A stretch of DNA of 64,000 bases from IMGVR_UViG_3300025770_001492:62001-126000; one strand, 5' to 3'; positions 18,123 through 63,062 are shown, counted from the stretch's first letter. The notes: a model not told the origin generated them from the sequence alone. Made by a program: numbers and translations.

Positions 18123-18551
18123 ATGAATTTTAGACAATTTTTAATAGAATCAGATTACAACGTAAAAAAGACCCTTGGAAAAGTACCAAAGAGTCATCGA
18201 TCCCTTATTGAAAAATATAAAGTAGAATTTGAAAAGGGAAACACTCTGGATGGGGACCACATTGGTGAAATAGATGAAAAAAAGAAGAAAATAAAACTTG
18301 CTGGCCCATGGAACTACGGAAGAGAATTCACCTTCCTGCACGAATTGGGCCATGCAGTATGGAATTACTTACTTGATGAAGAAAGTAAAAAAGAATGGAC
18401 GAAAGTTGTCAAAAAAACAAATAAACCAAGACAGCATCAAGGAATGGAAGAATTATTCTGCATGGCATATGCCAATTTTTACGCAAAAAACAAAATCGTA
18501 ATTCACGATCATCCAGAATGGGAAGAATTTATCAAAAAGTTGCCCAAATAA
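18123..18551 (+). CDS. HExxH zinc metallopeptidase-like protein with N-terminal capsid-targeting-like motif
   Basis: FLHELGHAVW plus downstream EELF third-ligand helix; starts MNFRQFLIESD; TATATA at 18107-18112. Confidence 0.7.
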   Translation: MNFRQFLIESDYNVKKTLGKVPKSHRSLIEKYKVEFEKGNTLDGDHIGEIDEKKKKIKLAGPWNYGREFTFLHELGHAVWNYLLDEESKKEWTKVVKKTNKPRQHQGMEELFCMAYANFYAKNKIVIHDHPEWEEFIKKLPK

Positions 18552-18579
18552 GTATACAACTCTCATCCAGAAAAGTACA

Positions 18580-18669
18580 ATGTACCGGATCTCATTCAAA
18601 AGCTTCATACAAGAAAAGCGATTCTTGAAATGGAAACAACTTCTTCAGAAAAAGACCAGCTACGTCTGA
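18580..18669 (+). CDS. 29-aa ORF with capsid-targeting-like motif, -1 out of frame with the RNA ligase
   Basis: MYRISFKSFIQEKRFLKWKQLLQKKTSYV; a -1 shift at GAA-AAG (18613-18618) gives MYRISFKSFIQEKAILEMETT, continuous with the ligase. Confidence 0.5.
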   Translation: MYRISFKSFIQEKRFLKWKQLLQKKTSYV

Positions 18670-19868
18670 TTATAACGAAATTGGCACTGGGCGACTTCAA
18701 CTGGCTCAAGGAGAAAGACATTCTAGTCGGTGATAAAGGTTCATCATGGATCTTAAATTATGGAATGAAAGATAAAAACGAGTTCAATAGACTTGTTCGT
18801 GGAATGGTAGTAGAAAAACCACATGCAAATAATTTCTTTCATGGCGACGATCCGCTAAAAGAAATCAAAAGCTTTCCTTTCATCAGATTTTTCAATCAAG
18901 GAGAAAAAGAATCTGACGAAATCGACATGAACGATTCGGAAATGCTTGAAAAGCTAGATGGAACCATGGTTGGAGTGTTTTTCTCAACCTATGATCCATC
19001 TAGCCCACAATGGCACACGAGAAGAATGTTAAGTTCATACGAATCCGATATGAAAAATACAGTCAAAGGATTTCATGGAGGGAATTACAACCTTATGTAT
19101 GAGATTGGCAAGTATGTAAAGAAACTTAATTTCAACCGAGAAGACACAAGCCACACATACGTTTTTGAATTCATTCATGACGCATCAACCGTGTTGACAA
19201 AATACAAAGAGAGCCAATGGGGATTATATCTTTTAGCTGGAAGAAACGTTGAAACGCACAAAGAAGAAACAGAAAGCGAATTGGACAAAATCTCAAAAAG
19301 AATTGGTGCCAACCGCCCTCAGAGATGGGATGCCACAAGCGAAGAGGAAATTAAAAACATGATGCAAAAAGCTGCATCTGAGATCGAAGACTTTGAGGGC
19401 ATGGTTTTTCGTGATAAAAAAACAGGCAAAAGAGTGAAATTAAAAGATCCCAAGTATGTAGAAAAACATCACATGCTGGGAGACACATCTCTCAAAAGAC
19501 TGATCCCAAAAACAATAGAGGGAGAAGAAGATGAAGTAACTGCATACTTTCCTCACGTAAAAGAATTGGTAGACGATATAAAGGAAAGACATGCAAACAT
19601 CAAAAACAAAACTGTGGAAACTGTAAATCAGTTTCAGAAATACAAAAATCTTCCAAGAAAAGAACTATGGGAGAAGGTTTCAAATATAGACAATGCTTTC
19701 ATCAGAAGCATGGTAATGAAGCACGTTGAATGCGAAGATTTGGAATACGAGATAGAAAAAGAACTCAAAAGAATTGCTGTAGCAACTGTTGAAAAAGACA
19801 CTTATTTAGGAAAGCAGACATTCAGTTATGCTTCTCGAAAGTATTTAGACTTACTAGGACTCAAATAG
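18630..19868 (+). CDS. T4 Rnl1-like ATP-dependent RNA ligase
   Basis: Motif I EKLDGT, motif IIIa FEFI, motif IV EGMVF, motif V VKLK. Confidence 0.85.
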   Translation: METTSSEKDQLRLIITKLALGDFNWLKEKDILVGDKGSSWILNYGMKDKNEFNRLVRGMVVEKPHANNFFHGDDPLKEIKSFPFIRFFNQGEKESDEIDMNDSEMLEKLDGTMVGVFFSTYDPSSPQWHTRRMLSSYESDMKNTVKGFHGGNYNLMYEIGKYVKKLNFNREDTSHTYVFEFIHDASTVLTKYKESQWGLYLLAGRNVETHKEETESELDKISKRIGANRPQRWDATSEEEIKNMMQKAASEIEDFEGMVFRDKKTGKRVKLKDPKYVEKHHMLGDTSLKRLIPKTIEGEEDEVTAYFPHVKELVDDIKERHANIKNKTVETVNQFQKYKNLPRKELWEKVSNIDNAFIRSMVMKHVECEDLEYEIEKELKRIAVATVEKDTYLGKQTFSYASRKYLDLLGLK

Positions 19869-20626
19869 TGAACGAAATCATAATCAAGAATAAGCAGCAA
19901 ATAGATGGAATACGAATAAGCTGCAAACTTGCTGCTGAGACACTAGATTACATTGAGGAATTTGTAGTAGAAGGAATCACTACAGAAGAAATCAATAATA
20001 TTGCAGCTAAATTCATAAAAGATAATGGAGCTACCTCTGCTCCACTGAACTACAAAGGATTTCCAAAAGAAACATGTATTTCCATCAACGAAGTAATATG
20101 CCACGGCATTCCAGATCAAACCGTCCTCAAGAACGGAGACATTCTGAATATCGACATAACCACAATCCTAGACGGATTCTATGGGGACACGAGCAGAATG
20201 TTTGCAGTCGGAGAAATAAACGAAACTGCGAAGGAACTGGTTCAGACGACCAAAGAATGCCTCATGATGAGCATAGAGACAGTGAAGCCTCAAAGTATGC
20301 TGTCGGGTATCGCCAAAGTAATTACCCAACATGCTGAATCTAACGGATTTAGCGTTGTCAACGCATTTTGTGGTCATGGGGTAGGACTTGAATTTCACGA
20401 GCCTCCATTCGTGCAGCACGACTATAAATCTGTAAAAGACGGATTTCTAATCAGTCTGGAAGAAGGCATGATTTTCACAATTGAACCAATGCTGTGCGAA
20501 GGGGAACGCCAAGCAATGCTTTTAGAAGACAATTGGACGGCGATTACCACAGACAAAAAACTGTCTGCTCAATTTGAGCATACAGTTTTAGTGACTAAAG
20601 GTGGATACGAAATATTGACTAAGTGA
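19868..20626 (+). CDS. map: type I methionine aminopeptidase
   Basis: DIT, GDTSR, GHGVG..FHE, TIEP and QFEHT metal-ligand motifs. Confidence 0.96.
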   Translation: MNEIIIKNKQQIDGIRISCKLAAETLDYIEEFVVEGITTEEINNIAAKFIKDNGATSAPLNYKGFPKETCISINEVICHGIPDQTVLKNGDILNIDITTILDGFYGDTSRMFAVGEINETAKELVQTTKECLMMSIETVKPQSMLSGIAKVITQHAESNGFSVVNAFCGHGVGLEFHEPPFVQHDYKSVKDGFLISLEEGMIFTIEPMLCEGERQAMLLEDNWTAITTDKKLSAQFEHTVLVTKGGYEILTK

Positions 20627-20677
20627 AACAGATCAAAGGTGCCACCTGCACACCATAGGTTTTATGAATTTTTAATA

Positions 20678-21424
20678 TTAAACAATTGGTTTAACAGAAT
20701 CGCTTTGAGCATCTTTAAGCAATTGAGGTATAGTAACCATTGCTGACTCTGTTAGTCTTTCGTACTCGTTGATATCTAGACTAAATATTCTATAGTGATG
20801 TGCAATCGGATTCCTCATAATCTGAGGCTTATATCCCTTGTGTTGCGCTTTCACCGTCACAATAAATGCAGGACCAACTTGTGGCAAGTGTTCTGGCCAT
20901 GGACCAACGGCTTCCCAGCACTCTCTTGTGGCCATCATCAGCCACTCCTGTACAAAGTCAACCTTCTGTTGTTGCATGTAGTACGACTGAAGTTCGACTC
21001 CAACAATCCCAGCATTTTGAGACTCGCAAACGTTAACCAAAAGATCCAACCACGCAGGATTTGTAACGACCACATCGCAATGCATGAAAACTATGTATTT
21101 TGAATCTTTACTTGCATTTTGATATCCTATATTACAAGCTTCGGACCAGTAAAGATTTTTATCGTTTTTAACAACCTTAACCTCACCATCAATGTCATCT
21201 AGAAAATCCTGACTATCATTATCCGATCCATTATCAACAACAATAATTTCGTAATTGTTGTTGAAACTAGTTACGGCAATAGATTGCAAACAAATATTTA
21301 GGTATTCTGGTCGGTCACGATGAACGACAACTATTGATATCTGTTCTTCACTTCCGTCATGAAGGTTGATCGTCATTTCTGGACGTTCTCCCTCCAGAGG
21401 ATTGTGTGGGTTTTGATCTGGCAT
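20678..21424 (-). CDS. family 2 glycosyltransferase
   Basis: ISIVVVHRDR...IIVVDNGS...FMHCD GT-A pattern. Confidence 0.85.
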   Translation of the reverse strand: MPDQNPHNPLEGERPEMTINLHDGSEEQISIVVVHRDRPEYLNICLQSIAVTSFNNNYEIIVVDNGSDNDSQDFLDDIDGEVKVVKNDKNLYWSEACNIGYQNASKDSKYIVFMHCDVVVTNPAWLDLLVNVCESQNAGIVGVELQSYYMQQQKVDFVQEWLMMATRECWEAVGPWPEHLPQVGPAFIVTVKAQHKGYKPQIMRNPIAHHYRIFSLDINEYERLTESAMVTIPQLLKDAQSDSVKPIV

Positions 21425-21425
21425 T

Positions 21426-21662
21426 TTAATCCTCTAATTCTATTTCGAAAGCACCAACCTCACAGAAGCATTCAGCATCTCCTTGCGGTGTGGCTATGTT
21501 TACTATATTGACTTTTCCGTCAGTCGAGTATTGGCTTTTAAGACTTTGCAAAAGACTATCTGCCTTTTTTGCACTACTAAATGCTTTTTCTGTTTTGATG
21601 AATACGTATTCACCTTCAACCTGTCTAGCAACTGTAATTACTGCAAATACATTTTTACTCAT
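21426..21662 (-). CDS. hypothetical protein
   Basis: 78 aa with GGAG SD. Confidence 0.65.
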   Translation of the reverse strand: MSKNVFAVITVARQVEGEYVFIKTEKAFSSAKKADSLLQSLKSQYSTDGKVNIVNIATPQGDAECFCEVGAFEIELED

Positions 21663-21671
21663 ATTGACTCC

Positions 21672-22151
21672 TTAAACCCATTCAAACGAATAGACAGGTT
21701 CGACCCACATTGTCGCAATAGGATCTTTATTTTTTATCATCATAAATTCTTTTCCCAAATTCATCAAGGTCAAAACAACTCTTCCCTCTGTCATCTGGTT
21801 TGGAGAAACTAAAAATAACCCCTTGCCAGACAGTTCTTCATTGACAGAAAATCGAACCTTGTACCCATTAGAAACATCTAAAGAAAATCCACAATCTATC
21901 TGAACAAATCCTCTATTGGGAATTCTAGTATATTTCTCGCCAGTGTAATCTTCTTCTTTTTCAGACAAGTTGGCAAACAGTCCCGCCATGTGGCTGCCAT
22001 TCGAACTTTTGTAATGAGAAGGCATAAAGCAATCGTCATCAGCATCTATCTTTGTACAGATACTTTTCACATCTGGACAGTCCCAATTTTTAACTTCTGA
22101 AGTGACCGGACTTGCTTCCGCTTTCACTCTAGGTTTATTTTTATTTTCCAT
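21672..22151 (-). CDS. trimeric dUTPase-fold protein lacking catalytic motifs
   Basis: AGLFA, QIDCGFSLDVSNGY and LMNLGKEFMMIKNKDPIA align with dUTPase; the motif III G.ID.DY.G is replaced by SPNQMTEGR and motif V is absent. Confidence 0.6.
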   Translation of the reverse strand: MENKNKPRVKAEASPVTSEVKNWDCPDVKSICTKIDADDDCFMPSHYKSSNGSHMAGLFANLSEKEEDYTGEKYTRIPNRGFVQIDCGFSLDVSNGYKVRFSVNEELSGKGLFLVSPNQMTEGRVVLTLMNLGKEFMMIKNKDPIATMWVEPVYSFEWV

Positions 22152-22166
22152 GTATTAAATAAGTAA

Positions 22167-22412
22167 CTAGGAATCAGAATTTTTCTTTTTTTGAATAGCT
22201 ATAACGTAATTATTGAAATTTTTACGAAATTGTTCGTAGGCTCCTGGCGGATATTTTTTGGCCTTTTTAATAAGCTCATTTGTTAAATATGGATCTAAAT
22301 TCTTGTCATTTATCCAATTTATAACATTCTCTAAACCAGGCTGTGAGTGCCACATTTTACTATCCTTCTTCCCCGGAATTTGAATCTTTATCGGCAGATT
22401 GTACTCGCTCAT
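22167..22412 (-). CDS. hypothetical protein
   Basis: Likely start MSEYN at 22412. Confidence 0.55.
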   Translation of the reverse strand: MSEYNLPIKIQIPGKKDSKMWHSQPGLENVINWINDKNLDPYLTNELIKKAKKYPPGAYEQFRKNFNNYVIAIQKKKNSDS

Positions 22413-22737
22413 CGTCTTTCTCCATATCGTCTTCTTTATCAATCTCAAAGTTATTTAGAACATCGGCCTGTTTCTGGGCATTCGCCCTCTGAATCATAGC
22501 AGATGAAATGTCCATAGGAATTGTAGGAGCATCTAATATTTGCTCCTGCATGATCGCCTCTCCTAATACTTTAACAATGTCTGCTGATACTTCTTTAAAC
22601 TCCGAAGATTCATATGTTTTTGAATTTGAAAAATCATAAAACAAGACTTTGGACACTTTTTCACCATCAACAAGTAGCTCAACATGCATTGGAACCAAAC
22701 CCGTCATAGATACTAGTGACATATTATTTTTTGACAT
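22360..22737 (-). CDS. hypothetical protein with acidic tail
   Basis: 125-aa ORF, AAGGG SD-like. Confidence 0.6.
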   Translation of the reverse strand: MSKNNMSLVSMTGLVPMHVELLVDGEKVSKVLFYDFSNSKTYESSEFKEVSADIVKVLGEAIMQEQILDAPTIPMDISSAMIQRANAQKQADVLNNFEIDKEDDMEKDDERVQSADKDSNSGEEG

Positions 22738-22788
22738 TTAATCCCTTTAAACATAAATAAATTAGCTTATGAAAATATAAGAGTAACA

Positions 22789-23223
22789 ATGATTAAATTT
22801 AAAGAATACATTGAAAAAAAAATGCAAGAGCAAAATACTGTTGGCAAGCACAACGATGGTGCCACCACAAATAATGCTGGAGCATATCTTGGGAGCGATT
22901 GGACTGGGAGCGAGCAAAGTCCAACAATGGGATATCTGGGACACCCTGTTCATTTACCAAGTCTAGACCTTGTGGTAAACATGCCAAGCCTCGGATTGCC
23001 AACAGTGAAAAGAAGTTCAAAAATCATACTAATTCAAAAGAACAAAAATCCAATATCGGTATTTCTATCCGATGGAACAAAAATATTTTTAACGCTTGAC
23101 GAATTCAATCGCATAAACGGGAAAAAACCCGAAGTAGGCAAGAACATTACCGTCACGTTCCAGCGTCATAATAAAAACAATTCAGAAGAAAACTCTAAAA
23201 TTCAAAACATCATGTGTCACTGA
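22789..23223 (+). CDS. hypothetical protein with capsid-targeting-like N-terminus
   Basis: Starts MIKFKEYIEKKMQE; TAAATA upstream; isolated plus-strand gene. Confidence 0.6.
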   Translation: MIKFKEYIEKKMQEQNTVGKHNDGATTNNAGAYLGSDWTGSEQSPTMGYLGHPVHLPSLDLVVNMPSLGLPTVKRSSKIILIQKNKNPISVFLSDGTKIFLTLDEFNRINGKKPEVGKNITVTFQRHNKNNSEENSKIQNIMCH

Positions 23224-23524: not shown

Positions 23525-24514
23525 TTATACATCACTCTTTTTTTCTATCTTCAATAACTCAGAAAGAATCTCTTTATGTTTTTCAGATACTTTTTCAGGA
23601 ACATCTAAAACTATCTTAATCAAAAGATTGCCTCTAACTTTTTGATTTTCCACAGAAGGCATCCCTTGACCCTCCACTTTAAAAATCTGTCCAACTTTTG
23701 TGCCAGCAGGAATTTTTAACAACATGACAGAACCCAGTGTTCTTACCTCTACATGGCTTCCAAGAACAAGCTCTGCATACGAAGCTGATACCTCTGCCTC
23801 TAAATCTAAACCATTTGGGGCATAGGAAAAATAGTCATCTTCTCTTACCTTTATGGCAATCAGCAAATCTCCAAAGCGACCATCAGGAGTTTCTTCTCCC
23901 TCGCCTTTCATCACAAGCTGACTCCCAGTCTGAACGCCAATTGGAATGTTAACTTTAAAGGTAAAATTCTCAACCCCATCATTGCCGCTCCCTCTACATT
24001 TGTCACATTTTTTAGAAGGCGTTTGACCTCTACCCTTGCAAACATTGCACTTGGCCTGTAAATTAAAAAATCCTTGCTGTATGTTTAAAACTCCCTTGCC
24101 GAGGCAGGTGCTACACGTTTTAAATTCTGTATAGCCCTCTGAGGAGCAGGATTTGCAAGGCTTGTTCTTCTCTACTTTTACATCTTTTTTACATCCTTGA
24201 AACGCATCTATCAGATCAATTTCTAATTCAACCAATATATGTTTAAGCGGTCTGACTTCCCAAGCTCTACGTCTAAAAGAAAACATGTCTCCGAACGAGC
24301 CAGAGACATGTCTATCGTATGAACGCCTTTTGATTGGATCTTTTAGAACATCGTATGCCCCACATATTGACTTGAACTTATTAGCAGCATCTGGGTCGTC
24401 AGGATTGGCATCAGGATGTGTCTGTCTGGCAAGGTTGCGATAAGCCTTATTGATTTCATCATCGCCAGCATCTCTTGAGACGCCTAATATTTCGTAGTAA
24501 TCAGGAGATGCCAT
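23525..24514 (-). CDS. dnaJ: DnaJ chaperone (J domain, four CxxCxGxG-type repeats, C-terminal domain)
   Basis: DYYEILGV...THPD; CKSC, CSTCLGKG, CNVCKGRG, CDKCRGSG; G/F linker is short. Confidence 0.95.
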   Translation of the reverse strand: MASPDYYEILGVSRDAGDDEINKAYRNLARQTHPDANPDDPDAANKFKSICGAYDVLKDPIKRRSYDRHVSGSFGDMFSFRRRAWEVRPLKHILVELEIDLIDAFQGCKKDVKVEKNKPCKSCSSEGYTEFKTCSTCLGKGVLNIQQGFFNLQAKCNVCKGRGQTPSKKCDKCRGSGNDGVENFTFKVNIPIGVQTGSQLVMKGEGEETPDGRFGDLLIAIKVREDDYFSYAPNGLDLEAEVSASYAELVLGSHVEVRTLGSVMLLKIPAGTKVGQIFKVEGQGMPSVENQKVRGNLLIKIVLDVPEKVSEKHKEILSELLKIEKKSDV

Positions 24515-34689: not shown

Positions 34690-34884
34690 CTAACCTTTTT
34701 TCTTTTTCTTTTTCTTTTTCTTCTTCTTTTTAGTTAAACTCTCCAACTCAAAAGGCGAAGCAGTTGACCTGCCGTGGACAGAGCCTACAACGGCCAGCGG
34801 CATCAAGCCAAGAGCGGCGGCATGTCTGGCCCTTGTGGATGCACTAGATTCTTTGGTAATTAGCCAATCTTTGAAAGTAATCAT
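34690..34884 (-). CDS. small basic protein with 12-Lys tail and capsid-targeting-like N-terminus
   Basis: MITFKDWLITKE...TKKKKKKKKKKKKG; TACATA-N5-ATG. Confidence 0.65.
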   Translation of the reverse strand: MITFKDWLITKESSASTRARHAAALGLMPLAVVGSVHGRSTASPFELESLTKKKKKKKKKKKKG

Positions 34885-49577: not shown

Positions 49578-49581
49578 TCAG

Positions 49582-49937
49582 TGGACCGGACGGGAGTCGA
49601 ACCCGTGTGTTGCGCTACCTATTCAAAAGCGTCTACCTGTATAGTTTGATGTTTGAGTTTCGCATCATTAAACCACAACAAACAAAGGTTTAAATCAACT
49701 ATCAAACAACGAGTCTTAGTTCAAAAGTAGTTTGATTTGCTTTGAACGCATCCAGTATTGCGGCAAGTTGTCAAACGTCACTGGCAGACCTTTGAAACTT
49801 GGGCTACTTATAATTAAGCAGCCATAGCGAAATTAGTTTTGTCAACTAAATTTTTAATCGGATTTTTAAGGAGCCTTCCGATCAACTCCTACAGGCAACT
49901 CAAGAACTCAACAGCCAATCGATACCATTTCCAGCCC
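49582..49937 (-). ncRNA. ssrA: tmRNA, tag (A)DKTNFAMAA
   Basis: Acceptor stem GGGCTGG/CCGGTCC-A with G3.U70; T arm ACGGG-TTCGACT-CCCGT; tag frame 49843-49814 GAC AAA ACT AAT TTC GCT ATG GCT GCT TAA after TTTAGTT; CCA not encoded. Confidence 0.95.
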
Positions 49938-49984: not shown

Positions 49985-50305
49985 CTAATTTTTATGAGCA
50001 TCTGCCCATTTTGAATCTTCTGGAATGTCGTGTGTTTTGACGTAATCTCGCCACTTTTCATATCCATAAAGATCGATATATTCGCCTCTTCTTAGAGATC
50101 TTTTTTCTTCTGCCTGCTTGAGAATCTTTTTCCTATCTTGATCAAGCTTTGGATAATCGGCACGACCAGATTGCTGCGATGCTGCTGTATTCGCCCTCTT
50201 TAGCTTCTTTTCAAAAGATTTACTAGTTTTTCTCAACTCTTCCCGTCCTTCTAAGAACTTAGAAAAATTCATAAAATATTCAGTCTGTTTGTTGTGTGAT
50301 TTCAT
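49985..50305 (-). CDS. basic hypothetical protein with capsid-targeting-like motif
   Basis: TATATA-N5-ATG at 50305; MNFSKFLEGREE motif from the internal ATG at 50272. Confidence 0.6.
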   Translation of the reverse strand: MKSHNKQTEYFMNFSKFLEGREELRKTSKSFEKKLKRANTAASQQSGRADYPKLDQDRKKILKQAEEKRSLRRGEYIDLYGYEKWRDYVKTHDIPEDSKWADAHKN

Positions 50306-51002: not shown

Positions 51003-51680
51003 TCATCTCATGTTCATATAGCTTTTCATGGCGTCAGGCATTCCATCTGGAAGTCTTCTTTCACTGTGTTTCGATCTTAATCTTTCGAGTGGACCCATTT
51101 CGTCATCCATGCCCTCTTCGTCGTCTTCCATGTCTTCGTCGTCAGCATCCATGTCCATTTCGTCGGCATCCATGTCTTCGTCGTCGGCATCCATGTCTTC
51201 GTCGTCAGCATCCATGTCTTCGTCGTCAGCATCCATGTCTTCGTCGTCAGCATCCATGTCTTCGTCGTCATCCATGTCATCTTCAGTGCCCATGGGAGGA
51301 CCAACCGCTTCGTTTTTATTTTGCATAAATGCATCAAAGCTTTCTGGCCATGTTTTTGCCTCTTTGCCGCTGGCATCTGTGTCTGGACTGTAGATTAAGT
51401 TTTTGTCGCCATCGTCTCCAAGTCCTTTTTCTTTGCCACCATCTGCAACTTGCATCCCAGGGTCTTTACCAGCAGCTTTGTATGGTGCAGGCTTAGAAGT
51501 TTTACTTCCAGCTACGTCTTCCATACCTTTTCCATCATCCTTTAACTTACGACCAGCCTGAGACTTCTCTGGAGAAGCTGGGGTTGGACCGTCATAGTCA
51601 GCAACTTTTTTAGTGCTTGCCTTTTCTCTCGTCTTGCTTCTAGAGTCTATATACTCGTTCCAAGTTTTCCAATTGTTCAT
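51003..51680 (-). CDS. low-complexity acidic protein with MDADDED repeats (candidate head scaffold or internal protein)
   Basis: N-terminal WKTWNEYI, Lys/Gly/Pro-rich middle and D/E/M tandem repeat; GGAG SD. Confidence 0.7.
   Translation of the reverse strand: MNNWKTWNEYIDSRSKTREKASTKKVADYDGPTPASPEKSQAGRKLKDDGKGMEDVAGSKTSKPAPYKAAGKDPGMQVADGGKEKGLGDDGDKNLIYSPDTDASGKEAKTWPESFDAFMQNKNEAVGPPMGTEDDMDDDEDMDADDEDMDADDEDMDADDEDMDADDEDMDADEMDMDADDEDMEDDEEGMDDEMGPLERLRSKHSERRLPDGMPDAMKSYMNMR
51128..51277. repeat. coding 21-nt tandem repeat (MDADDED)
   Basis: About 6-7 copies of catccatgtcttcgtcgtc(a/g)g with no spacers. Confidence 0.92.
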
Positions 51681-51937: not shown

Positions 51938-52258
51938 ATGCAATTCAGAAAATGGCTAATAAAAGAAATGGCTCACATATCAATTGATGAACCAATCGAC
52001 ATTGGAGATCAAAAAAATGTATCTATGATTGATATGCAGTTTGAACTATATCCCGACATGACCCAGACAACTCTAGCTCACTGGATAGTCAACGGATTTG
52101 CCGCCAAAGTCCCAAATAGCAATTATTATATAGTTTTTGACGGAAAAACAGGAAAAGCAAAGGTGTCCGATTCGACAGAGAACAAAATGCAAGTTCCTGG
52201 CGAATGGCACAAAATGGCTTATATGTCGAGCGATATGCCAGCTTGGAAATCTGCGTGA
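51938..52258 (+). CDS. hypothetical protein with capsid-targeting-like N-terminus
   Basis: MQFRKWLIKEMAH; TATATA-N4-ATG. Confidence 0.65.
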   Translation: MQFRKWLIKEMAHISIDEPIDIGDQKNVSMIDMQFELYPDMTQTTLAHWIVNGFAAKVPNSNYYIVFDGKTGKAKVSDSTENKMQVPGEWHKMAYMSSDMPAWKSA

Positions 52259-52259: not shown

Positions 52260-53640
52260 TTATTGATCTGACCAAACACGATCAGTTCTTCCTAGAAAAG
52301 GCGCAGACTCAATTGCTTCGTCCATGGGAATGGGATCAATATTCGAAAAAGATGGTTCTCCCGAAAATCTAAACTTAATTTGTTTTCCGCCACGAGCAGG
52401 ACTCAAAAATCTAGAAAACAATAGACCATGCTTGATTGGATCGACATCCGTTATCCCAAGACAGTAGCAACTAAGAGCACCAACTGCCGAGCCTCTTCCG
52501 GGACCGACTGCCGAAGAACCGCTGGAGCCATATGTCTCAAAGTACCATCTTCTGGCTTCATCGGTCATCATTTTTTGGATCAAAAAGTAAGAGGAAAAGC
52601 CTTTTTGGCAAATTAAAGAATATTCTTCTTCTATCCTATCCAAATATTCTTTATTCCTAGGAATTTTCCTCTTAACAACCCCTTCTATGATTGATTCCTT
52701 AAACTTAATGTCAGATTCGCTAAATGCAGGAAGTTTGATAGTTCTATCAAGCTTTACGCCTTTTGCTTTTTCGCAAAGGGCAACGGTATTTAACTTGGCC
52801 TGCTTAAGTATTTCGTAATCTATTACATCCTTGTAATCACTTTCCCACTTCGCATTTATCTCTTCTTCTGACTTCATCCATAAGTTTGAATCTTGCAATT
52901 CGAACATATCAGCCATGTCATTCTGTGCCAACGCTTGTTCGATTTGCTTCATGGTTCTTCCTGTTTGAACCATAATCATCTTTCTCTGCATTTCGCTGTC
53001 TTCTTTGAGACAGTAGTGGCAATCATTTGTAACAATAATTGGTAAATTATATTTTTGGCTGGCTTTTATTATAAACTCATCATAAGGCTTTTGTTTCGAG
53101 AAGTCTAAAAGCATTATTTCTAGATAGAAGTTTTCTCCGAACATGGCCATATATTTTTCGACCATCTCCATAGCTGGACCTTCGCCACCCACATCAAAAG
53201 CTTGTCCAATTTCACTGTTATAACAGCAAGAAGTGAATATAATTCCTTCTTTATATTGCATGAGGACTTCGTGATTGACTCTGGGTTTCCTGTAGAAACC
53301 CCTCGTCCAACCCCAAGATGAAAGAGTAACCAGATTGCTGTAGCCTGTTTCATTATAGGCTATGGCAAGCAGATGATTCGATTTTCTTAACTTGGCTTGC
53401 TCTTCTTGCGTACCCAGACCTCTATTGAATTCCGTCATAGAAGGAATAGTGGTCGTGTCAGGCTGCAACTGATTTACATAAAGCTCACAAGCAAATATAG
53501 GCTCTAGGTTGTTTTCATCGCATGCTCTAATCTGGCGTGGGACAGAACCCATCGCACCATGATCTGATATGCATAAAAACTTTTGATTTACCTGTTTAGA
53601 ATATTTTCCATATTCTTCAACAGTGGCGTATCCATCTAAG
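52260..53640 (-). CDS. dnaE: DNA polymerase III alpha, N-terminal polypeptide, exon 2 (PHP domain and first palm segment)
   Basis: LDGY, SDHG, ACELY, NHL, NDCHY, GPGRGS and FSRFLSPAR, then a short unrelated tail and stop. Confidence 0.93.
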
Positions 53641-53863
53641 CACAAACTCCACAGTTTCTTGTGGTGTAGACTATATCATCACCCCGAAGGGTGTCGGACG
53701 CTCTGGCCTGTAATTAAGAGGACTGAACCTCTCAGGTAGTCGTTGCACGTTCCAAAAGTGTACTTCTGGCTTCGCTCAGGATTGCCCTCGACTTTACGTT
53801 AGGGTTTCCCTGAATTCATCCGATTTGCATGCAAGATTTCTCTCACATGGCCCCAGTTAGTTA
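53641..53863 (-). ncRNA. group I self-splicing intron, 223 nt, no endonuclease ORF
   Basis: P1 GCCU|UA..UGGGGC with U.G at the 5' splice site; P2 with GAAA loop; P3 UCGGAUG/CGUCCGA; P4 UUCAGG/CCUGAG; P7 GACUA/UAGUC; P8 with UUCG loop; P9; terminal omega-G. Removal restores HTDFSLLDGY. Confidence 0.93.
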
Positions 53864-53919
53864 AGGCTGAAATCAGTATGTCTGTGTAGATGTTCAAAAC
53901 CTACAATCAGGTCTTTCAT
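53864..53919 (-). CDS. dnaE: DNA polymerase III alpha, N-terminal polypeptide, exon 1
   Basis: AAGGAG-N6-ATG; MKDLIVGFEHLHRHTDFS+CT carrying the PHP HxH motif. Confidence 0.9.
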
Positions 53920-53979
53920 ATTTTACTCCTTTAGATTCAAGATACTTTTCAAATTCGCCAGCGTCATATTTGCCATTAT

Positions 53980-54504
53980 TTAATCTTTCCATTGTTTCCA
54001 TTTGCCCGTCTTTTCATTTTTAAAGTAAAAAGCAGCTTTTGGATCTTGTGTGTCTACCTTGAAGAAAGGCTCAGATCCTTTTCTGTTTCTGCACCACTTG
54101 TTTTCAACAGGCGACTCCAGCATGGCTTCACGATTTACAATGAACAGCCTTTTGTAATCGCCCCCGATTATCATCATATGAGTGGCATGCTCTTCTGCTT
54201 TGTCCCTTTTGCGGTAAGGGAAGTCCATTGTATGAAATTTGAAAGGAACGTCAAACCATTTTGTTCCCCAATCTTGCTTTATCTCGGCCTCAATTCTCCA
54301 TTCACCGATACTCTTTTTTGAATGCGTTCCAGCAACATCCCATATCTTTTTAAATTTTCCTCTGCTCTCGTCTAAGTTCTCTGATATTTTTTTGAATCCA
54401 CGTTGTTGTAAAAATTCCGTTGCCACTAGCTTTGCAGGTCCATCATACTTTTCGTACCTATCTTTGCAAAACCTTATATCATTAGGTTTTGGCATCAAAT
54501 ACAT
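53980..54504 (-). CDS. PD-(D/E)XK nuclease-like protein
   Basis: WDVAG...IEAEIKQDW pattern. Confidence 0.55.
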   Translation of the reverse strand: MYLMPKPNDIRFCKDRYEKYDGPAKLVATEFLQQRGFKKISENLDESRGKFKKIWDVAGTHSKKSIGEWRIEAEIKQDWGTKWFDVPFKFHTMDFPYRKRDKAEEHATHMMIIGGDYKRLFIVNREAMLESPVENKWCRNRKGSEPFFKVDTQDPKAAFYFKNEKTGKWKQWKD

Positions 54505-57051: not shown

Positions 57052-57056
57052 ATTTT

Positions 57057-58310: not shown

Positions 58311-58351
58311 AAAATAAAGAGCCACCCCCACAAAGAAGTGAAGAGTGGCTC
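58311..58351 (-). terminator. terminator-like hairpin between prkA and yeaH
   Basis: GAGCCACTCTTCAC-TTCTTT-GTGGGGGTGGCTC followed by TTTATTTT. Confidence 0.55.
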
Positions 58352-58364
58352 ATCCTCTTTATAT

Positions 58365-60479
58365 CTAGGAGTCGTTAGCTACATCGCCTCTTGCAAATAT
58401 AGAACCAACATAATCAAGAACATCCGTTGCGGATTTTTCGTTATATCCATGATGCTTAATCAAGCGGGACTTAATTGCATCAATTTTTTCTTGAACGTCT
58501 GGATCAACTACAGAGGCACCAAGAGAATTTAAAGCAGAAAGCTTTATGTGATCTCTAGTGTCTTCGAATAGTTTGGTTTGCAAAGCCTTTTGCAACTGTG
58601 GGTTACTATCCCACTTAAAGGTTTTGCTTTCATGGGCAAGATTTCCAATGAAAGCTGCCAAACTTCTGCGGAAGTCGTCAGAGCCAACTTCTGGAACATC
58701 AATTTTTTCTTCAATCGATCTCATCAACTGCTCATCTGGCAACTGTTCCTGTCCTGTGTACGGATTGGTCACTTTTGCCTTTTTAATGTATGCCATCACG
58801 TTATCGACATAATTAGTACAAAGTCTAATAATGGCATTCTCATCACCAACAAGTGCTTTTTGAACTTCTGTTTTCAAAATCTCATCTAGCTCTTTCATAG
58901 CAAAATCAACACAAGTGTTAAACCTACTTGCGTCCTCTTGATTAGAGATCAAAGAAGATCCGTCAAGTCCTTCACGAATTTCATTCAGCACCATGAATGG
59001 ATTGATGTAATCATGGTGAGAACTCAAACAGTTAGAAATCTTGTCCTGAACATATCGAGCAGAGACTCCGCCAGACATCCCTTCATTTGGATATTTATCT
59101 CGCATTTCTTTTACTGAATCTTCAGTCCAGCCAGGCATTGATTTTCCATCATAAAGCTTTGACTTCTCTACCAAAGAAATTTTGCCATCTTTATCATCTT
59201 GCAATCTTGTCAAAACCGCCCAAAGAGCGGCAATCTCTAAAGTATGAGGAGCAACATGCTGAGGAACTTTACTTTTGCCGTAATCGTTCTGATAAACTTT
59301 AAGTTCATCAGAAAGACTTAAAAGATATGGAACATCGATCTTCACAGTTCTATCACGCAAGGCTTCCATGCTTTGATTGTTCTTGAGTTTTTCATACTCA
59401 GGATTATTTGTATGCCCAATTAAGACTTCATCGACCCCAATCTGAGCGAACTTTTTCGGCTTTATGCTTCGCTCTTGAGACGCTCCCAAAAGATCGTACA
59501 AAAACTCTTGAGCAAGCTTCAGCATCTCAATAAATTCAACAACACCACGATTCCCCACACAAAACTCACCATCAAAGTTGAAAGCTCTAGGATCACTATC
59601 AGATCCAAAGTGAGGAAGCTTCGCATAATTGATGTCACCAGTTAGCTCAGTAGCATCTTGATTCTTTTCGTCTTTAGGTTGAAAAGTTGCAATCCCGCAT
59701 CTGTCTGCTTCAGAATAAACTTTTCTCACAACAACAATGTGCTCGTCAACAACCTTTCTCCAATCACCCTTGTGTATTTTCAAAAGTTCATCCATAAACT
59801 TTTTACATCTCGGATTAAGCTCCCCGTCGCAACGGAGTTCGTATGTTTGCTCTCCTTGAGGGTGATTCCCAAACTCTGCCTTTACTTCATTCAAATCTTT
59901 GAGAAGTTCTGCTCGTACTTTCATGGGCACTAACTTAATGGGATCGTCATGCATCGGACAATCATCAGAATCATTTGTATAAATTCCATCGGACCCTGTT
60001 GGAAGGTTTTTCCAACGGTATGTATACCAAGCACCTTGGTCTGTTTGAGAGTATTCTTCCATGCCTCTTTTGATAAGTCGGCAAATTGTAGACTTAGACG
60101 AACCTACTGGCCCGTGGAGAAGAAGAATTCTTTTTTCGGTTCCGTACCAACCGGCAGCACCCCGAATAAATTTAACCAATTCATGTAGAGTATTGTCCAA
60201 ACCATAAATTGGAATTTCATCATTATCAAAGAAGTTATAATGGATATAGGTTTTTCGATACTTTTTAAACTCAGAAGTTCCAGCATTCATGATCATATCA
60301 TAAACTCGCTGGTAAGCTGATCGGACTAAGCCTGGACTTTTATAACAACTATCAATGTACTCAGAAAAAGTCATTTCCTGATTAAGTGTTTGAAATTTAC
60401 CAGTATCAAAAAATCCAGCAAGCTTGTCTAGCTTAGAAGTGCCTTCATGCTCTTCCTTGTTGAAATTTTCATTTTCCAT
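58365..60479 (-). CDS. prkA: PrkA/YeaG family AAA+ serine kinase/ATPase
   Basis: LLHGPVGSSKST Walker A, DEKNQDATELTG, NRGVVEFIEM, HTNNPEY and ALRDRT. Confidence 0.96.
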   Translation of the reverse strand: MENENFNKEEHEGTSKLDKLAGFFDTGKFQTLNQEMTFSEYIDSCYKSPGLVRSAYQRVYDMIMNAGTSEFKKYRKTYIHYNFFDNDEIPIYGLDNTLHELVKFIRGAAGWYGTEKRILLLHGPVGSSKSTICRLIKRGMEEYSQTDQGAWYTYRWKNLPTGSDGIYTNDSDDCPMHDDPIKLVPMKVRAELLKDLNEVKAEFGNHPQGEQTYELRCDGELNPRCKKFMDELLKIHKGDWRKVVDEHIVVVRKVYSEADRCGIATFQPKDEKNQDATELTGDINYAKLPHFGSDSDPRAFNFDGEFCVGNRGVVEFIEMLKLAQEFLYDLLGASQERSIKPKKFAQIGVDEVLIGHTNNPEYEKLKNNQSMEALRDRTVKIDVPYLLSLSDELKVYQNDYGKSKVPQHVAPHTLEIAALWAVLTRLQDDKDGKISLVEKSKLYDGKSMPGWTEDSVKEMRDKYPNEGMSGGVSARYVQDKISNCLSSHHDYINPFMVLNEIREGLDGSSLISNQEDASRFNTCVDFAMKELDEILKTEVQKALVGDENAIIRLCTNYVDNVMAYIKKAKVTNPYTGQEQLPDEQLMRSIEEKIDVPEVGSDDFRRSLAAFIGNLAHESKTFKWDSNPQLQKALQTKLFEDTRDHIKLSALNSLGASVVDPDVQEKIDAIKSRLIKHHGYNEKSATDVLDYVGSIFARGDVANDS

Positions 60480-60600
60480 GAGAAGTTCCTATTCTATAAT
60501 TTCGAAAGTTTGGAGAGTTTGGAGATTCTTGTTCCCGAATATAAAAGAGTATAAGACCTTCTAGAATTATGATCAATGCTAATTTGTTTGATAAATTATT

Positions 60601-60969
60601 TTACTTAACCTCGCCAAAATTTTCGCCACTAGTGATGTCATCGATCTGTTGACCAAACTTTTTAACATCAGCATCTCCATACGGATCAGTTCCCATTTTG
60701 CTAACAGCTTCTGCAATTTTTCTGGTCGCTTTCACACCGCCTGGTTTTTCCATTTTATGTTTAAACCTATAATCGTGCGAATTGTTAAACTTATCTGTTC
60801 CCTCTGGATTTGAAAAAGAAAAATTTGTAGAAGAAACCAAAGAAACTTTTGATTTTGATCCACATTCAGGACACTTGGCTTTTTTTATATTTTCTTCCCT
60901 GTTGGACATTGTAGACATGATGTCATAATCATGTCTACATTTTTTACATTCTAATTCATAAAAAGGCAT
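60601..60969 (-). CDS. FmdB-family zinc-ribbon protein
   Basis: MPFYELECKKC...CPECGS. Confidence 0.8.
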   Translation of the reverse strand: MPFYELECKKCRHDYDIMSTMSNREENIKKAKCPECGSKSKVSLVSSTNFSFSNPEGTDKFNNSHDYRFKHKMEKPGGVKATRKIAEAVSKMGTDPYGDADVKKFGQQIDDITSGENFGEVK

Positions 60970-60971
60970 TT

Positions 60972-61298
60972 TTACTCCGAGTCTTCTTCGTTTTCGTTTT
61001 TATCTTGTGTTTTTTTATACATCAATATATACAGTAATGTATAAAGTTCGGCTATTTTTTTTGACTTGTATTCTGGTGATCTGAATCTCCAAAACCAACT
61101 TTTTTCTAATGTTTTACGTACTGTTTCCAAAACCTTGGGTCTAGGATCTTTTGTCTTAACTTCAACGTGCGGCACCTCAAGGTATTCTCGCATTATATCT
61201 TCTTCATCAAAATAACGTTCTTCATTGAAAAAATTATCTATATCGTCCCTGAAATCTTCGTTGCCATCATAATCGAAATATCTCATCCTTTCCTCCAT
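60972..61298 (-). CDS. hypothetical protein with acidic N-terminus
   Basis: 108 aa, tiles with its neighbours. Confidence 0.6.
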   Translation of the reverse strand: MEERMRYFDYDGNEDFRDDIDNFFNEERYFDEEDIMREYLEVPHVEVKTKDPRPKVLETVRKTLEKSWFWRFRSPEYKSKKIAELYTLLYILMYKKTQDKNENEEDSE

Positions 61299-61299
61299 C

Positions 61300-61830
61300 C
61301 TAAAAGGTAGCCTTGTATAATTTTTCTGCCTTTTCCCACAGCTTAATTATCCTAGATTCATTAACGCTCATTTCGGAACTTATAAATCTTCGAGATATAG
61401 CACCAAAGGGTAGTACATTTTTATTTATGCACTCAGCTAAAACAAAGTTACCAACTCCATCTAAATAACTTACGAATGTAGATTGTTCATTAGATTTAGA
61501 AGAAGTAATTTTATCCCCTAAATAAGTGTCAACGGCCATAACGTCAGAATTAATAAATAAAGTTTTTTCAAAATGTCTACTAAATTTCGTTTTAGCAACA
61601 TTTAAATAATTTTGATCATTATATTGAGAAAAATTAATTTTACATCTTTTTGCCCAATTTGAAACAATATCGCTTTTAATAAAGTCTCCTCTTGCAAGTA
61701 TGAAAACCTTTGCGTCTGGTAAATTCTTAACAATTGAATACCATGAGCAAAACGCCATCCATGGCTCAAATGGGTCTTTATCAATATTAATAACAACAGC
61801 TAAGTTGTCGCCAGTTTTAGAGATAGTCAT
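61300..61830 (-). CDS. hypothetical protein, weak GT-A-like pattern
   Basis: SWYSIVKNLPD...LFINSDVM. Confidence 0.5.
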   Translation of the reverse strand: MTISKTGDNLAVVINIDKDPFEPWMAFCSWYSIVKNLPDAKVFILARGDFIKSDIVSNWAKRCKINFSQYNDQNYLNVAKTKFSRHFEKTLFINSDVMAVDTYLGDKITSSKSNEQSTFVSYLDGVGNFVLAECINKNVLPFGAISRRFISSEMSVNESRIIKLWEKAEKLYKATF

Positions 61831-61912
61831 GTTTTAATTTAGTTACCAGTGTAAATTTTCAATAACTAAATAAACTACTTAGACTTACAATCGCAGTGAC
61901 TGCTTTATTGCT

Positions 61913-62119
61913 TTATTCCTTTGATTCATCTTCTATCAATTCTCCAGATTCAGCATCAACGATAGCAAAATCAGAAACATCCATTTTCAATGTTTCTACA
62001 TACTCTGCACATGCAGCGAGCATTTCTTTCGCTTCTTCAACATCAGAAGTAAACCACAATCCAACTTGAGGATGCTTTAAGGTTCTGCCTGTCTTTTTAT
62101 TCAATAAAGTATACATCAA
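61913..62119 (-). CDS. hypothetical protein
   Basis: 68 aa. Confidence 0.6.
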   Translation of the reverse strand: MMYTLLNKKTGRTLKHPQVGLWFTSDVEEAKEMLAACAEYVETLKMDVSDFAIVDAESGELIEDESKE

Positions 62120-62508
62120 CCTATATTAGTATCAGGCGATGGAACTTGAACCGTTGAGTTAGCATTATTTTGAGCTTGTCCAAATTGTTGAGGCTGACCT
62201 ATGCCGCCGCCACGAACCGAACCAGATTTTGGCGTCGAGGGTGGGGACATATTAGAAGCAGGGGGAACAGGATTCGGCTGAGTGCCGGGACTCATGTTTG
62301 AAGCTGGTCTTTTGTTGTTTGTTTGCAATTTGTCAGACACATTAAATGCCGATCTGGGCTTTTTAGAACTATTTAAATTATCTTGAGGATTGATGCCTGC
62401 CATTTGTGGATTAGCAGGTGCTACAGGGCTTTCTCCTGCCCTTCCTGCTGCGTTCATTCCTGTGGCACTTGCTCCCGTGCCTTGCTCAAGCCATTTTCTG
62501 AATTCCAT
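62116..62508 (-). CDS. Pro/Gln/Gly-rich disordered protein with capsid-targeting-like N-terminus
   Basis: MEFRKWLEQG; PASNMSP twice; TACATA-N5-ATG. Confidence 0.65.
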   Translation of the reverse strand: MEFRKWLEQGTGASATGMNAAGRAGESPVAPANPQMAGINPQDNLNSSKKPRSAFNVSDKLQTNNKRPASNMSPGTQPNPVPPASNMSPPSTPKSGSVRGGGIGQPQQFGQAQNNANSTVQVPSPDTNIG

Positions 62509-62522
62509 ACTATTATGTAGAT

Positions 62523-62801
62523 ATGGGACGTAAAAAAACGCTAATCAACAAGAAAAACAAGAAAAGATTAGAAAGCTGTGCTTTTTGCGAATGTGCAGAC
62601 TATGAAATTTTAGATGTCCACAGAATAAACGAAGGAGCAGACGGAGGAAGATATACCAGTCACAACTCCTTGACTGTCTGTGCAAACTGCCATCGGAAAA
62701 TTCATTCTGGAAAAATAAAAACATTCAGAAAGCATCTAAGCACTGGCGGATATGTCCTTCATTGTGAAATCGAAGGACAAGAACAGTTTTTGAAACTATG
62801 A
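62523..62801 (+). CDS. HNH endonuclease family protein
   Basis: CAFC...DVHRI...N.LTVCANCHRKIH. Confidence 0.85.
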   Translation: MGRKKTLINKKNKKRLESCAFCECADYEILDVHRINEGADGGRYTSHNSLTVCANCHRKIHSGKIKTFRKHLSTGGYVLHCEIEGQEQFLKL

Positions 62802-63062
62802 TTACTTCTTTGCGTTATTGTCAGGCAAAAATTTTGCTGCATCGGCTGGCTTTAGCTGGCCGCTATCGATTGCTTTTATAACATTATTTTTTACAGCATC
62901 TTTTACGGCTTTAGAATCTCCACCACTTTTGATTGTTTTTGTGGTGTCTGCTTTAATTTGCTGGCTCAACTGAGAATTCTCTGCGTCCTTTTCCGCATTG
63001 CCCTGTTGTCCCACTTCCATCTCTTTAAGAGATACCCATTTTTCAAAAGAATAATTATTCAT
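62802..63062 (-). CDS. hypothetical protein with capsid-targeting-like N-terminus
   Basis: MNNYSFEKWVSLKEM; TAGATA-N7-ATG. Confidence 0.65.
   Translation of the reverse strand: MNNYSFEKWVSLKEMEVGQQGNAEKDAENSQLSQQIKADTTKTIKSGGDSKAVKDAVKNNVIKAIDSGQLKPADAAKFLPDNNAKK

What the first reader, a model, noticed from the sequence alone, without database searches (positions are those of the whole stretch)
18123..63062. Dispersed family of proteins sharing a T4 internal-protein-like N-terminal motif
Seen: MNFRQFLIESD (18123), MYRISFKSFIQE (18580), MIKFKEYIEKKMQE (22789), MITFKDWLITKE (34884), MNFSKFLEGREE (50272), MNNWKTWNEYID (51680), MQFRKWLIKEM (51938), MEFRKWLEQG (62508) and MNNYSFEKWVSLKEM (63062). 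The bodies are otherwise unrelated: protease, ligase, poly-Lys peptide, disordered proteins. Most follow a TA(N)ATA box, and several are isolated genes running against the local strand. Established: the T4 IPII/IPIII capsid-targeting sequence MKTYQEFIAE directs head packaging and is cleaved after Glu by the prohead protease. Inference: a short portable tag that recruits diverse cargo into the head, defining an ejected-protein toolkit.
Basis: partly seen in the sequence, partly recalled or inferred. Interest (0 to 1): 0.68.

Follow-up and report, generated by a model that had tools for sequence, protein, structure and literature searches.

The report
Head-targeting tag on many phage proteins
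About 25 otherwise unrelated proteins of this very large uncultivated phage begin with the same roughly ten-residue tag, which closely matches the phage T4 signal that loads proteins into the head for injection, so the injected protein set could be predicted from sequence alone.

Summary
All nine N-termini sit at the stated coordinates. The motif, M-x(0-5)-aromatic-[KRQS]-x-[FW]-[LIVM] usually followed by Glu, starts 18 of 369 blindly called genes in the 245.5-kb contig, against 0.8 expected (P about 1e-18). About 25 genes carry it in all. The bodies share nothing but the first 8-16 residues.

One of the nine (18580) is a 29-aa ORF out of frame with the RNA ligase, so the ligase is not tagged. 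Three others (22789, 51680, 63062) are weak variants.

The conserved positions are the ones shown by mutation to matter in the T4 capsid targeting sequence: residues 4 and 7 for targeting, 8 and 10 for cleavage. In T4 the same search finds only ipII, ipIII and gp61.1.

The contig is about half a genome and holds no head genes. Its relatives carry a T4-type portal, S77 prohead protease and gp23 capsid protein. In 76 loci chosen only by that protease, the tag starts 31 of 1149 genes against 1.2 expected.

Most tagged genes have an ATAAA-type box a few bases before the ATG and no Shine-Dalgarno site.

Best reading: a T4-like head-targeting propeptide, greatly expanded in a huge phage. Packaging, cleavage and ejection remain untested.

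The parts
18123..18551 (+). Tagged gene, 142 aa. Strong tag, and the body carries an invariant HExxH (small zincin-like metallopeptidase).
   Evidence: Matrix score 17.9. 121 aligned homologues keep F3 (106 of 109 aligned), K/R4 (101) and F/Y6 (108), with H73, E74 and H77 invariant. In the AlphaFold model (pLDDT 83.9) residues 1-8 fall below 50. Fold matches are weak and all zincin peptidases. TATATAAA box lies 8-10 nt before the ATG.
22789..23223 (+). Tagged gene, 144 aa. Weak tag variant with Tyr at the second aromatic position. Isolated plus-strand gene.
   Evidence: score -0.2. The LR756511 orthologue carries a clear tag at an internal Met. TATAAG box 7 nt before the ATG. No Pfam or PHROG match.
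34690..34884 (-). Tagged gene, 64 aa. Strong tag, ending in a run of 13 Lys.
   Evidence: Score 17.7. pI 10.7. The LR756511 orthologue keeps the tag.
49985..50272 (-). Probable tagged gene, 95 aa, basic. The tag starts at an internal Met of a 140-aa ORF, so the true start is uncertain.
   Evidence: It fits the strict amino-acid pattern but scores low on the matrix because of Ser at position 2.
51003..51680 (-). Weakly tagged gene, 225 aa, with long acidic repeats (pI 4.1). SD-led.
   Evidence: The LR756511 homologue begins with a clearer tag.
51938..52258 (+). Tagged gene, 106 aa. Strong tag. Isolated plus-strand gene.
   Evidence: Score 12.2. CATAAAG and TATATA boxes 4-11 nt before the ATG. 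My gene caller picked a later start.
62116..62508 (-). Tagged gene, 130 aa, low-complexity and basic (pI 10.3).
   Evidence: Score 10.2. CATAAT 3 nt before the ATG. Composition.
62802..63062 (-). Weakly tagged gene, 86 aa, with the tag offset by five residues.
   Evidence: GATAAA box 5 nt before the ATG.
18580..18669 (+). 29-aa ORF with a motif-like start. Rejected as a member; it overlaps the ligase start in another frame.
   Evidence: About 22 chance matches are expected among all ATGs of the genome.
18630..19868 (+). RnlA-like RNA ligase, 412 aa. Not tagged.
   Evidence: PHROG 562, E 2e-30. No start codon in its frame between the stop at 18549 and 18630.

Best explanation
The shared N-terminus is a capsid-targeting propeptide of the T4 kind. 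A short amphipathic helix places two aromatic side chains (i and i+3) and an aliphatic one (i+4) on a single face. This face docks the newly made protein onto the scaffolding core of the assembling prohead. A Glu two to five residues further on gives the S77 (gp21-type) prohead protease a site at which to cut off the tag. The cargo then stays inside the head with the DNA and enters the host at infection.

In this roughly 500-kb phage lineage the tag has spread to about 25 unrelated genes in the half genome in hand. Most of them are separate transcription units, with an ATAAA-type box so close to the ATG that the mRNA is probably leaderless or nearly so.

Shown here: the tag, its enrichment, its conservation in orthologues, its match to the functional residues of the T4 signal, its link to the box, and its co-occurrence with T4-type head genes in relatives.

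Inferred: binding to the core, cleavage, packaging, ejection, and the leaderless start.
For: - Enrichment: 18 of 369 genes against 0.81 expected. Clean bimodal separation on the weight matrix.
- Protein-level selection: F 24 and W 19 at the second aromatic position; 10 different codons at the aliphatic position, always with T as the second base. The offset from Met varies from 0 to 5 residues, and the tag occurs on both SD-led and box-led genes.
- Orthologues at 21-66% identity in LR756511 keep the tag while the linker varies. The 142-aa family keeps it in most of the 109 sequences that align over the N-terminus (F3 106, K/R4 101, F/Y6 108).
- T4 as control: the pattern finds only ipII, ipIII and gp61.1 at gene starts, and ipI differs at one position. 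T4 residues 4 and 7 target, 8 and 10 process, and the protease cuts after L/I-x-E (PMC9026906; CTS sequence in PMC8442874).
- A Glu lies 2-5 residues after the second aromatic in 23 of 25 tags. Hydrophobic-x-E is present in 23 of 25 against 63 of 309 other N-termini.
- Relatives: LR756511 shares 133 of 369 proteins with this contig. It has Portal_T4 (1e-74), Peptidase_S77 (7e-28) and Gp23 (5e-87) in T4 order, with three tag-like genes next to the capsid gene. G002 also has S77. The contig itself has a gp18-like sheath.
- Loci chosen only by the protease: 31 of 1149 genes tagged against 1.17 expected, P 4.5e-33.
- Contigs chosen only by box plus tag: 4 of 4 near-complete ones carry S77.
- Cargo fits an injected toolkit: an ArdC-like anti-restriction protein of 659 aa (ArdC-N 1e-8, PHROG anti-restriction 4e-11), a nucleotidyltransferase, HExxH peptidases, weak sub-threshold helix-turn-helix matches in a 99-aa protein, and poly-Lys and acidic-repeat proteins.
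Against: - No head gene lies on this contig: S77 and Gp23 are absent, and it is 49% complete. My searches did not find the missing half.
- The canonical [LIVM]-x-E site is present in only 9 of 25 tags. In most, the Glu follows the aliphatic residue directly, so the P3 position would be aromatic.
- No gp55-type late sigma factor was found, so calling the box a T4-like late promoter is analogy only.
- There is no proteomic, transcript or structural evidence.
- The motif definition was refined after looking at the data.
- LR756511 and G002 are close to each other (capsid proteins 95% identical) and count as one replicate.
Confidence: 0.7

Rival explanations
1. The conserved start is a by-product of a nucleic-acid signal. 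Leaderless or near-leaderless mRNAs from the ATAAA-box promoters would need a particular A/U-rich 5' coding sequence for initiation, and the peptide itself would have no function.
For: Strong link between tag and box without SD (15 of 25 against 22 of 310). The usual codons are A/T-rich: TTT in 33 of 43, and AAA or AGA at the second position.
Against: W (TGG) and F (TTT/TTC) alternate at one position, and ten codons are used at the aliphatic position. The distance from the ATG varies by up to 15 nt. Seven of 25 tagged genes have an SD, and box-led genes without the tag exist. T4 ipII and ipIII carry the same peptide behind ordinary SD sites.
Confidence: 0.08
2. The tag is a real peptide signal with another destination or purpose. 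Examples: docking on a different assembly (tail, baseplate, membrane), recognition by a chaperone, or a degron that times the removal of these proteins.
For: Nothing here shows where the proteins go. The canonical cleavage motif is imperfect. Some cargo (nucleotidyltransferase, peptidases) could act inside the producing cell.
Against: Position-by-position match to the T4 head-targeting residues. Enrichment around head modules of the S77 lineage. Tag-like genes lie beside the capsid gene. The tag is charged and amphipathic, not a secretion or membrane signal.
Confidence: 0.17
3. Chance, N-terminal composition bias, or a paralogous family whose bodies have diverged beyond recognition.
For: The motif is short and A/T-rich codons favour F, K and N. 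About 22 matches per genome arise in shuffled sequence. At least two listed or found cases are chance: 18580, and the RfaE-like enzyme whose orthologue lacks the motif.
Against: P values of 1e-18 to 1e-33 against the interior rate. In A/T-rich T4 the only N-terminal hits are the internal proteins and gp61.1. Bodies differ in fold class, length (46-995 aa) and charge (pI 4.1-10.7).
Confidence: 0.03

Closest known systems
[quoted passage not shown]
   Same: A tag of about ten residues at the extreme N-terminus. Aromatic residues at i and i+3, then an aliphatic residue, then Glu. Carried by otherwise unrelated small proteins, some basic and some anti-restriction. Found in phages with gp20, gp21, gp22 and gp23-type head assembly. 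The pattern derived here matches the T4 sequence and, in T4, finds only ipII, ipIII and gp61.1.
   Different: The consensus is M-x-F-[KR]-x-[FW]-[LI]-E rather than M-K-T-[YF]-[QK]-E-F-[IT]. The Glu usually comes one residue earlier, or one to two residues later, than in T4. There are about 25 carriers in half a genome against three or four in T4. Cargo reaches 995 aa and includes acidic proteins. Most genes have a promoter-like box abutting the ATG and no SD. The phage is only a remote T4 relative (10 T4 proteins hit at E below 1e-5). Function is untested here.
Long propeptides of ejection and inner-body proteins in phiKZ-like giant phages (SPN3US, 201phi2-1; PMC5694885)
   Same: Giant phages whose gp21-related prohead protease removes N-terminal propeptides, thought to target many proteins into the head. 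SPN3US gp53 and gp54 share an identical 15-residue N-terminus.
   Different: Those propeptides are mostly 100-130 residues long and are cut at A/S/G-x-E. No short portable consensus tag has been described across many unrelated proteins. Here the tag is about 10 residues.
P1 DarB N-terminal packaging signal (PMC9024508)
   Same: An N-terminal segment sufficient to send a heterologous protein into the capsid, carried by an anti-restriction protein that is injected.
   Different: It is 30 residues long with no reported shared consensus. P1 has a different head type. It is a single system rather than a genome-wide tag.
T4 late promoter TATAAATA
   Same: An A/T-rich box resembling (C)ATAAATA or TATATA lies upstream of the tagged genes. 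Similar boxes lie further upstream of SD-led head genes in the relative LR756511.
   Different: Here the box ends 3-11 nt before the ATG, so there would be no room for an SD-containing leader. No gp55 homologue was found. No transcript ends were seen.

Membership tests
T4-type capsid targeting sequence | Lies within the first 10-20 residues of the precursor | tested here: met
   The core begins at residues 2-7 in all members, and interior occurrences run at background rate.
T4-type capsid targeting sequence | Two aromatic residues three apart, which are the targeting determinants (T4 residues 4 and 7) | tested here: met
   Position 1 is F 39, W 3, Y 1. Position 4 is F 24, W 19, in 43 instances from three genomes. 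T4 mapping from PMC9026906. The set was selected by a pattern that requires these classes, so the 121-member orthologue alignment is the independent support.
T4-type capsid targeting sequence | Processing site L/I-x-E directly after the targeting part (T4 residues 8 and 10) | tested here: inconclusive
   A Glu lies 2-5 residues after the second aromatic in 23 of 25, and hydrophobic-x-E in 23 of 25, but [LIVM]-x-E in only 9 of 25. In the wider IMG/VR set, L-[LI]-x-E is common.
T4-type capsid targeting sequence | Portable: unrelated mature proteins share only the tag | tested here: met
   All-against-all BLAST finds no body similarity beyond low complexity. Pfam and PHROG assignments are diverse.
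T4-type capsid targeting sequence | The same genome encodes a gp21 (S77) protease and a gp22-type scaffolding core | tested here: inconclusive
   Absent from this 49%-complete contig. Present in the relatives LR756511 and G002, and in 4 of 4 near-complete contigs found by box plus tag. The missing half was not recovered.
T4-type capsid targeting sequence | Tagged proteins enter the prohead, lose the tag and are ejected into the host | not testable with these tools
   The phage is uncultivated.
phiKZ/SPN3US-type head propeptides | Propeptides of about 100 residues or more, cut at A/S/G-x-E | tested here: not met
   The conserved part is about 10 residues, and orthologue alignments become body-like by about residue 15-30. 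The residue at P3 is hydrophobic, not A, S or G.
T4 late (gp55-dependent) promoter | A TATAAATA box at -10, and a gp55 late sigma factor encoded by the phage | tested here: inconclusive
   Box-like words are enriched, but exact TATAAATA is rare near starts. No gp55 homologue was found by phmmer in the contig or in the two relatives.

The most novel reading that the evidence does not exclude
A clade of 160-kb to 600-kb phages with T4-type heads uses one short tag, together with a dedicated leaderless-type promoter, as a plug-in system. Any gene that acquires the roughly 40-bp box-plus-tag cassette becomes a head-packaged, injected protein. On this reading, dozens of effectors per genome (anti-restriction, peptidases, nucleotidyltransferases, DNA-binding and polyionic proteins) can be read off from sequence alone across hundreds of uncultivated phages. 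T4 gp61.1 would then be an overlooked fourth internal protein.
Probability: 0.4. Interest if true: 0.75.

Novelty: new variant of a known kind. Interest (0 to 1): 0.6.

Why it matters
Proteins injected with phage DNA act first in an infection, and many are counter-defence factors. They are normally found only by virion proteomics of cultivated phages.

If this tag works as the T4 signal does, it gives a sequence-only way to list the injected proteins of huge uncultivated phages. At least 598 IMG/VR contigs carry the associated protease lineage. It would also point to new anti-defence candidates among the many tagged proteins without known domains.

The result would also show that the T4 targeting rule (two aromatics, an aliphatic residue, a Glu) is conserved across very distant relatives. 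A second natural tag consensus would be useful for protein-delivery phage engineering.

The coupling to a promoter box abutting the start codon suggests a distinct class of probably leaderless phage transcripts.

Tried and rejected
- Ligase as cargo: rejected. The frames differ and the ligase frame has no upstream start. The ligase homologue in LR756511 lies elsewhere and is untagged.
- RfaE-like kinase/adenylyltransferase (476 aa, outside the window): it carries a motif-like start, but its orthologue does not and there is no box, so I treated it as chance.
- Search for the missing half of the genome. The end sequences found one contig that extends the record by about 25 kb, with no capsid gene. 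Searches with capsid and protease profiles returned no contig from the same samples.
- gp55 late sigma: no homologue by BLAST or phmmer.
- The weight matrix trained on the IMG/VR hits is too strict at positions 1-2, because the DNA pattern fixed them. It scores T4 ipII and ipIII negative although they are the prototype. I used it only for the separation.
I redid it from coordinates.
- Foldseek against the PDB gave no match at E of 0.001 or better for the 142-aa protein. It gave only weak zincin-peptidase rows, which I use as a hint.
Full report
**What the window is**

The 64-kb window is bases 62001-126000 of a single 245,522-bp IMG/VR virus record with 37.7% G+C. CheckV rates the record 49% complete, so the whole phage is probably near 500 kb. 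Its nearest named relative in the phage collection is LR756511, an uncultivated 595-kb phage. That phage shares 133 of my 369 called proteins at a median 41% identity. The contig carries T4-like replication and recombination genes and a gp18-like tail sheath. It has no capsid, portal or prohead protease gene.

**The observation**

I called genes with a crude codon-usage and SD model that knows nothing of the motif. I then asked how often the core (aromatic, [KRQS], any, [FW], [LIVM]) begins at residues 2-7.
- It does so in 18 of 369 genes, against 0.81 expected from its rate inside proteins. With a following acidic residue it is 17 against 0.45.
- Counting every ATG with twelve open codons gives 47 matches, against 21.7 +/- 3.1 in Markov shuffles. 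So roughly twenty chance matches exist among non-genes.
- A weight matrix built from other contigs separates 15 gene starts (at least 8 bits) from all the rest (5.4 bits or less).
- Adding starts that my caller had placed elsewhere, and variants supported by orthologues, gives about 25 tagged genes. Eight are in the window and the rest lie outside it.

**Corrections to the list**
- The start at 18580 opens only 29 codons, in a frame different from the RNA-ligase ORF at 18630. The ligase frame has no start codon between the stop at 18549 and 18630. The ligase is therefore untagged and this entry is best taken as chance.
- 22789, 51680 and 63062 are weak variants. For the first two, the counterpart in LR756511 begins with a clear tag.
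- 50272 is an internal Met of a longer ORF. It fits the amino-acid pattern, but its start is uncertain.
- The protease label for 18123 is reasonable. H73, E74 and H77 are invariant in 121 homologues. The confident model (pLDDT 83.9) has only weak fold matches, all to zincin metallopeptidases.

**Peptide or nucleotide signal**

Across 43 instances in three genomes:
- The second aromatic position is W (TGG) 19 times and F (TTT or TTC) 24 times.
- The aliphatic position uses ten codons that share only the middle T.
- The basic position uses thirteen codons.

The tag starts zero to five residues after Met. It occurs behind SD sites as well as behind the box. Orthologues in LR756511 at 21-66% identity keep it while the next 10-20 residues vary. 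In the 142-aa family, the 109 sequences that align over the N-terminus keep F3 in 106, K/R4 in 101 and F/Y6 in 108, close to the conservation of the catalytic histidines. This is selection on the peptide. In the model of that protein the first eight residues are the only stretch below pLDDT 50. They form the start of a helix that does not pack on the body.

**Unrelated bodies**

All-against-all BLAST of the tagged proteins finds only the first 8-16 residues and low-complexity runs in common. Lengths run from 46 to 995 aa and pI from 4.1 to 10.7. Recognisable cargo:
- a 659-aa protein with PAP2, ArdC-N and metalloprotease parts, matching an anti-restriction PHROG;
- a DUF6036 nucleotidyltransferase;
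- two HExxH proteins;
- a 99-aa protein with only weak, sub-threshold helix-turn-helix matches;
- three small proteins ending in Lys runs;
- several acidic or Pro/Gln-repeat proteins.

**Comparison with T4**

The T4 targeting sequence is given in PMC8442874. PMC9026906 reports that residues 4 and 7 carry targeting and residues 8 and 10 carry processing, and that gp21 cuts after L/I-x-E. Those four positions are Tyr, Phe, Ile and Glu. They line up with the four conserved positions here.

Run on the T4 genome, my pattern finds at gene starts only ipII, ipIII and the unannotated gp61.1. IPI differs at one position. This also serves as a control: in an A/T-rich genome no ordinary N-terminus matched.

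The fit is not perfect. The Glu follows the aliphatic residue directly in 15 of 25 tags, and the canonical [LIVM]-x-E appears in only 9 of 25. A looser hydrophobic-x-E is present in 23 of 25, against 63 of 309 other N-termini.

**Head machinery in relatives**

LR756511 has Portal_T4, Peptidase_S77 and Gp23 in the T4 order, with a 310-aa scaffold-like gene between protease and capsid gene. Three genes with tag-like starts follow directly after the capsid gene; they narrowly miss the strict pattern. Its blind gene calls give 16 tagged starts against 2.5 expected.

G002, a 341-kb IMG/VR contig found through a tagged protein, also has S77 and shows a smaller excess. Its capsid protein is 95% identical to that of LR756511, so the two count as one replicate.

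**Two wider tests**
1. I scanned IMG/VR for the DNA pattern of box, 4-8 bases, ATG and the first five tag codons. This gave 116 hits in 104 stretches. Of these, 102 open ORFs of at least 40 codons. Positions the pattern did not constrain show the same continuation, commonly L-[LI]-x-E. Of 18 large contigs hit, nine have S77, including all four that are at least 90% complete.
2. I collected 76 loci (943 kb) using only a profile of the protease. There the tag starts 31 of 1149 called genes against 1.17 expected, with 21 distinct N-termini. That scan matched at least 598 contigs, so the lineage is large.

**The box**

Fifteen of 25 tagged genes have an A/T box in -20..-3 and no SD, against 22 of 310 other genes. 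Without any prior definition, ATAAA and CATAA are the most enriched 5-mers upstream. In the clearest cases (C)ATAAATA ends 4-7 nt before the ATG, and the same arrangement recurs in the orthologues. In LR756511 the SD-led head genes have similar boxes 15-35 nt upstream.

By analogy with the T4 late promoter, transcripts of the tagged genes would start at or next to the ATG. This is inference. I found no gp55 homologue and could obtain no read data.

**Conclusion**

The most likely reading (about 0.7) is a T4-type capsid-targeting propeptide that has spread to some 25 genes in this half genome. It would define a set of head-packaged and probably injected proteins.

Less likely readings are that the peptide is real but has another destination or role (about 0.17), that the conservation comes from a leaderless-mRNA requirement (about 0.08), or that it is chance or hidden paralogy (about 0.03).

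The concept is known for T-even phages, where reviews already suggest the CTS lets T4-like phages load varied proteins. Among the top-ranked papers on jumbo, huge or mega-phages in the library, none used the term. The SPN3US work describes much longer propeptides instead. I therefore class this as a new variant of a known kind. The rule is the same, but the consensus, the scale, the cargo range and the promoter arrangement differ, and the phage lineage is remote and very large.

Noticed in passing
window 49579-49937 (-): A phage-encoded tmRNA (Rfam 112 bits; ARAGORN tag peptide of nine residues ending in AA) lies directly beside the tagged gene at 49985-50272.
   Followed up: partly
window 53648-53873 (-): A group I intron (Rfam 90.7 bits) lies between the 461-aa ORF at 52260-53645 and the small ORFs at 53894-54504. 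The interrupted gene was not identified.
   Followed up: no
window 9482-16774 (-): A single ORF of about 2430 aa sits in a stretch of raised G+C (0.44 against 0.38 for the window). It was not annotated.
   Followed up: no
T4 genome AF158101, 18966-19130 (-), gene 61.1: This 54-aa hypothetical T4 protein starts with a near-perfect internal-protein tag and ends in a Lys/Glu-rich tail, like the small poly-Lys tagged proteins here. It may be an overlooked head-packaged protein of T4.
   Followed up: partly
T4 genome AF158101, 114210 (+), inside the uvsW annotation: An internal Met followed by a tag-like sequence opens the last 76 codons of the annotated uvsW. The record notes sequence discrepancies there.
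   Followed up: no
L044:3509-4981 (-) and L087:1203-2636 (-), capsid genes of LR756511 and G002: The gp23-like capsid proteins begin with a conserved ten-residue stretch ending in F-L-N-E. This resembles the second half of the tag and fits L-x-E, so the capsid propeptide may be very short here (65 residues in T4).
   Followed up: no
A2 alignment (homologues of window 18123-18548): Several database homologues were called with upstream extensions, so the tag begins at an internal Met. Twelve lack the N-terminus. Gene callers seem to misplace starts of these SD-less genes, as mine did at 51938 and 62508.
   Followed up: partly
L120, L123, L132, L145, L154, L180 (IMG/VR contigs): Pairs of tagged paralogues of 358 and 366 aa, each with its own box, recur about 1250-1260 nt apart in several contigs. 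This is a tandem duplication of a whole box-tag-cargo unit.
   Followed up: no
G000 162230-163384 and 163437-164591 (-), outside the window: Two tandem 384-aa paralogues with near-identical N-termini. The one scanned matches PHROGs annotated as head decoration, virion structural and tail fibre proteins.
   Followed up: partly
window 23525-24514 (-); G000 5529-5762 (+) and 10710-10868 (-): By their first residues, the 329-aa protein looks like a DnaJ-type J-domain protein and the two small ones look like CsrA-type regulators. Neither was checked against a profile library.
   Followed up: no
window 139-201 (-): A weak tRNA match (31.7 bits, just over threshold) that ARAGORN does not call.
   Followed up: no
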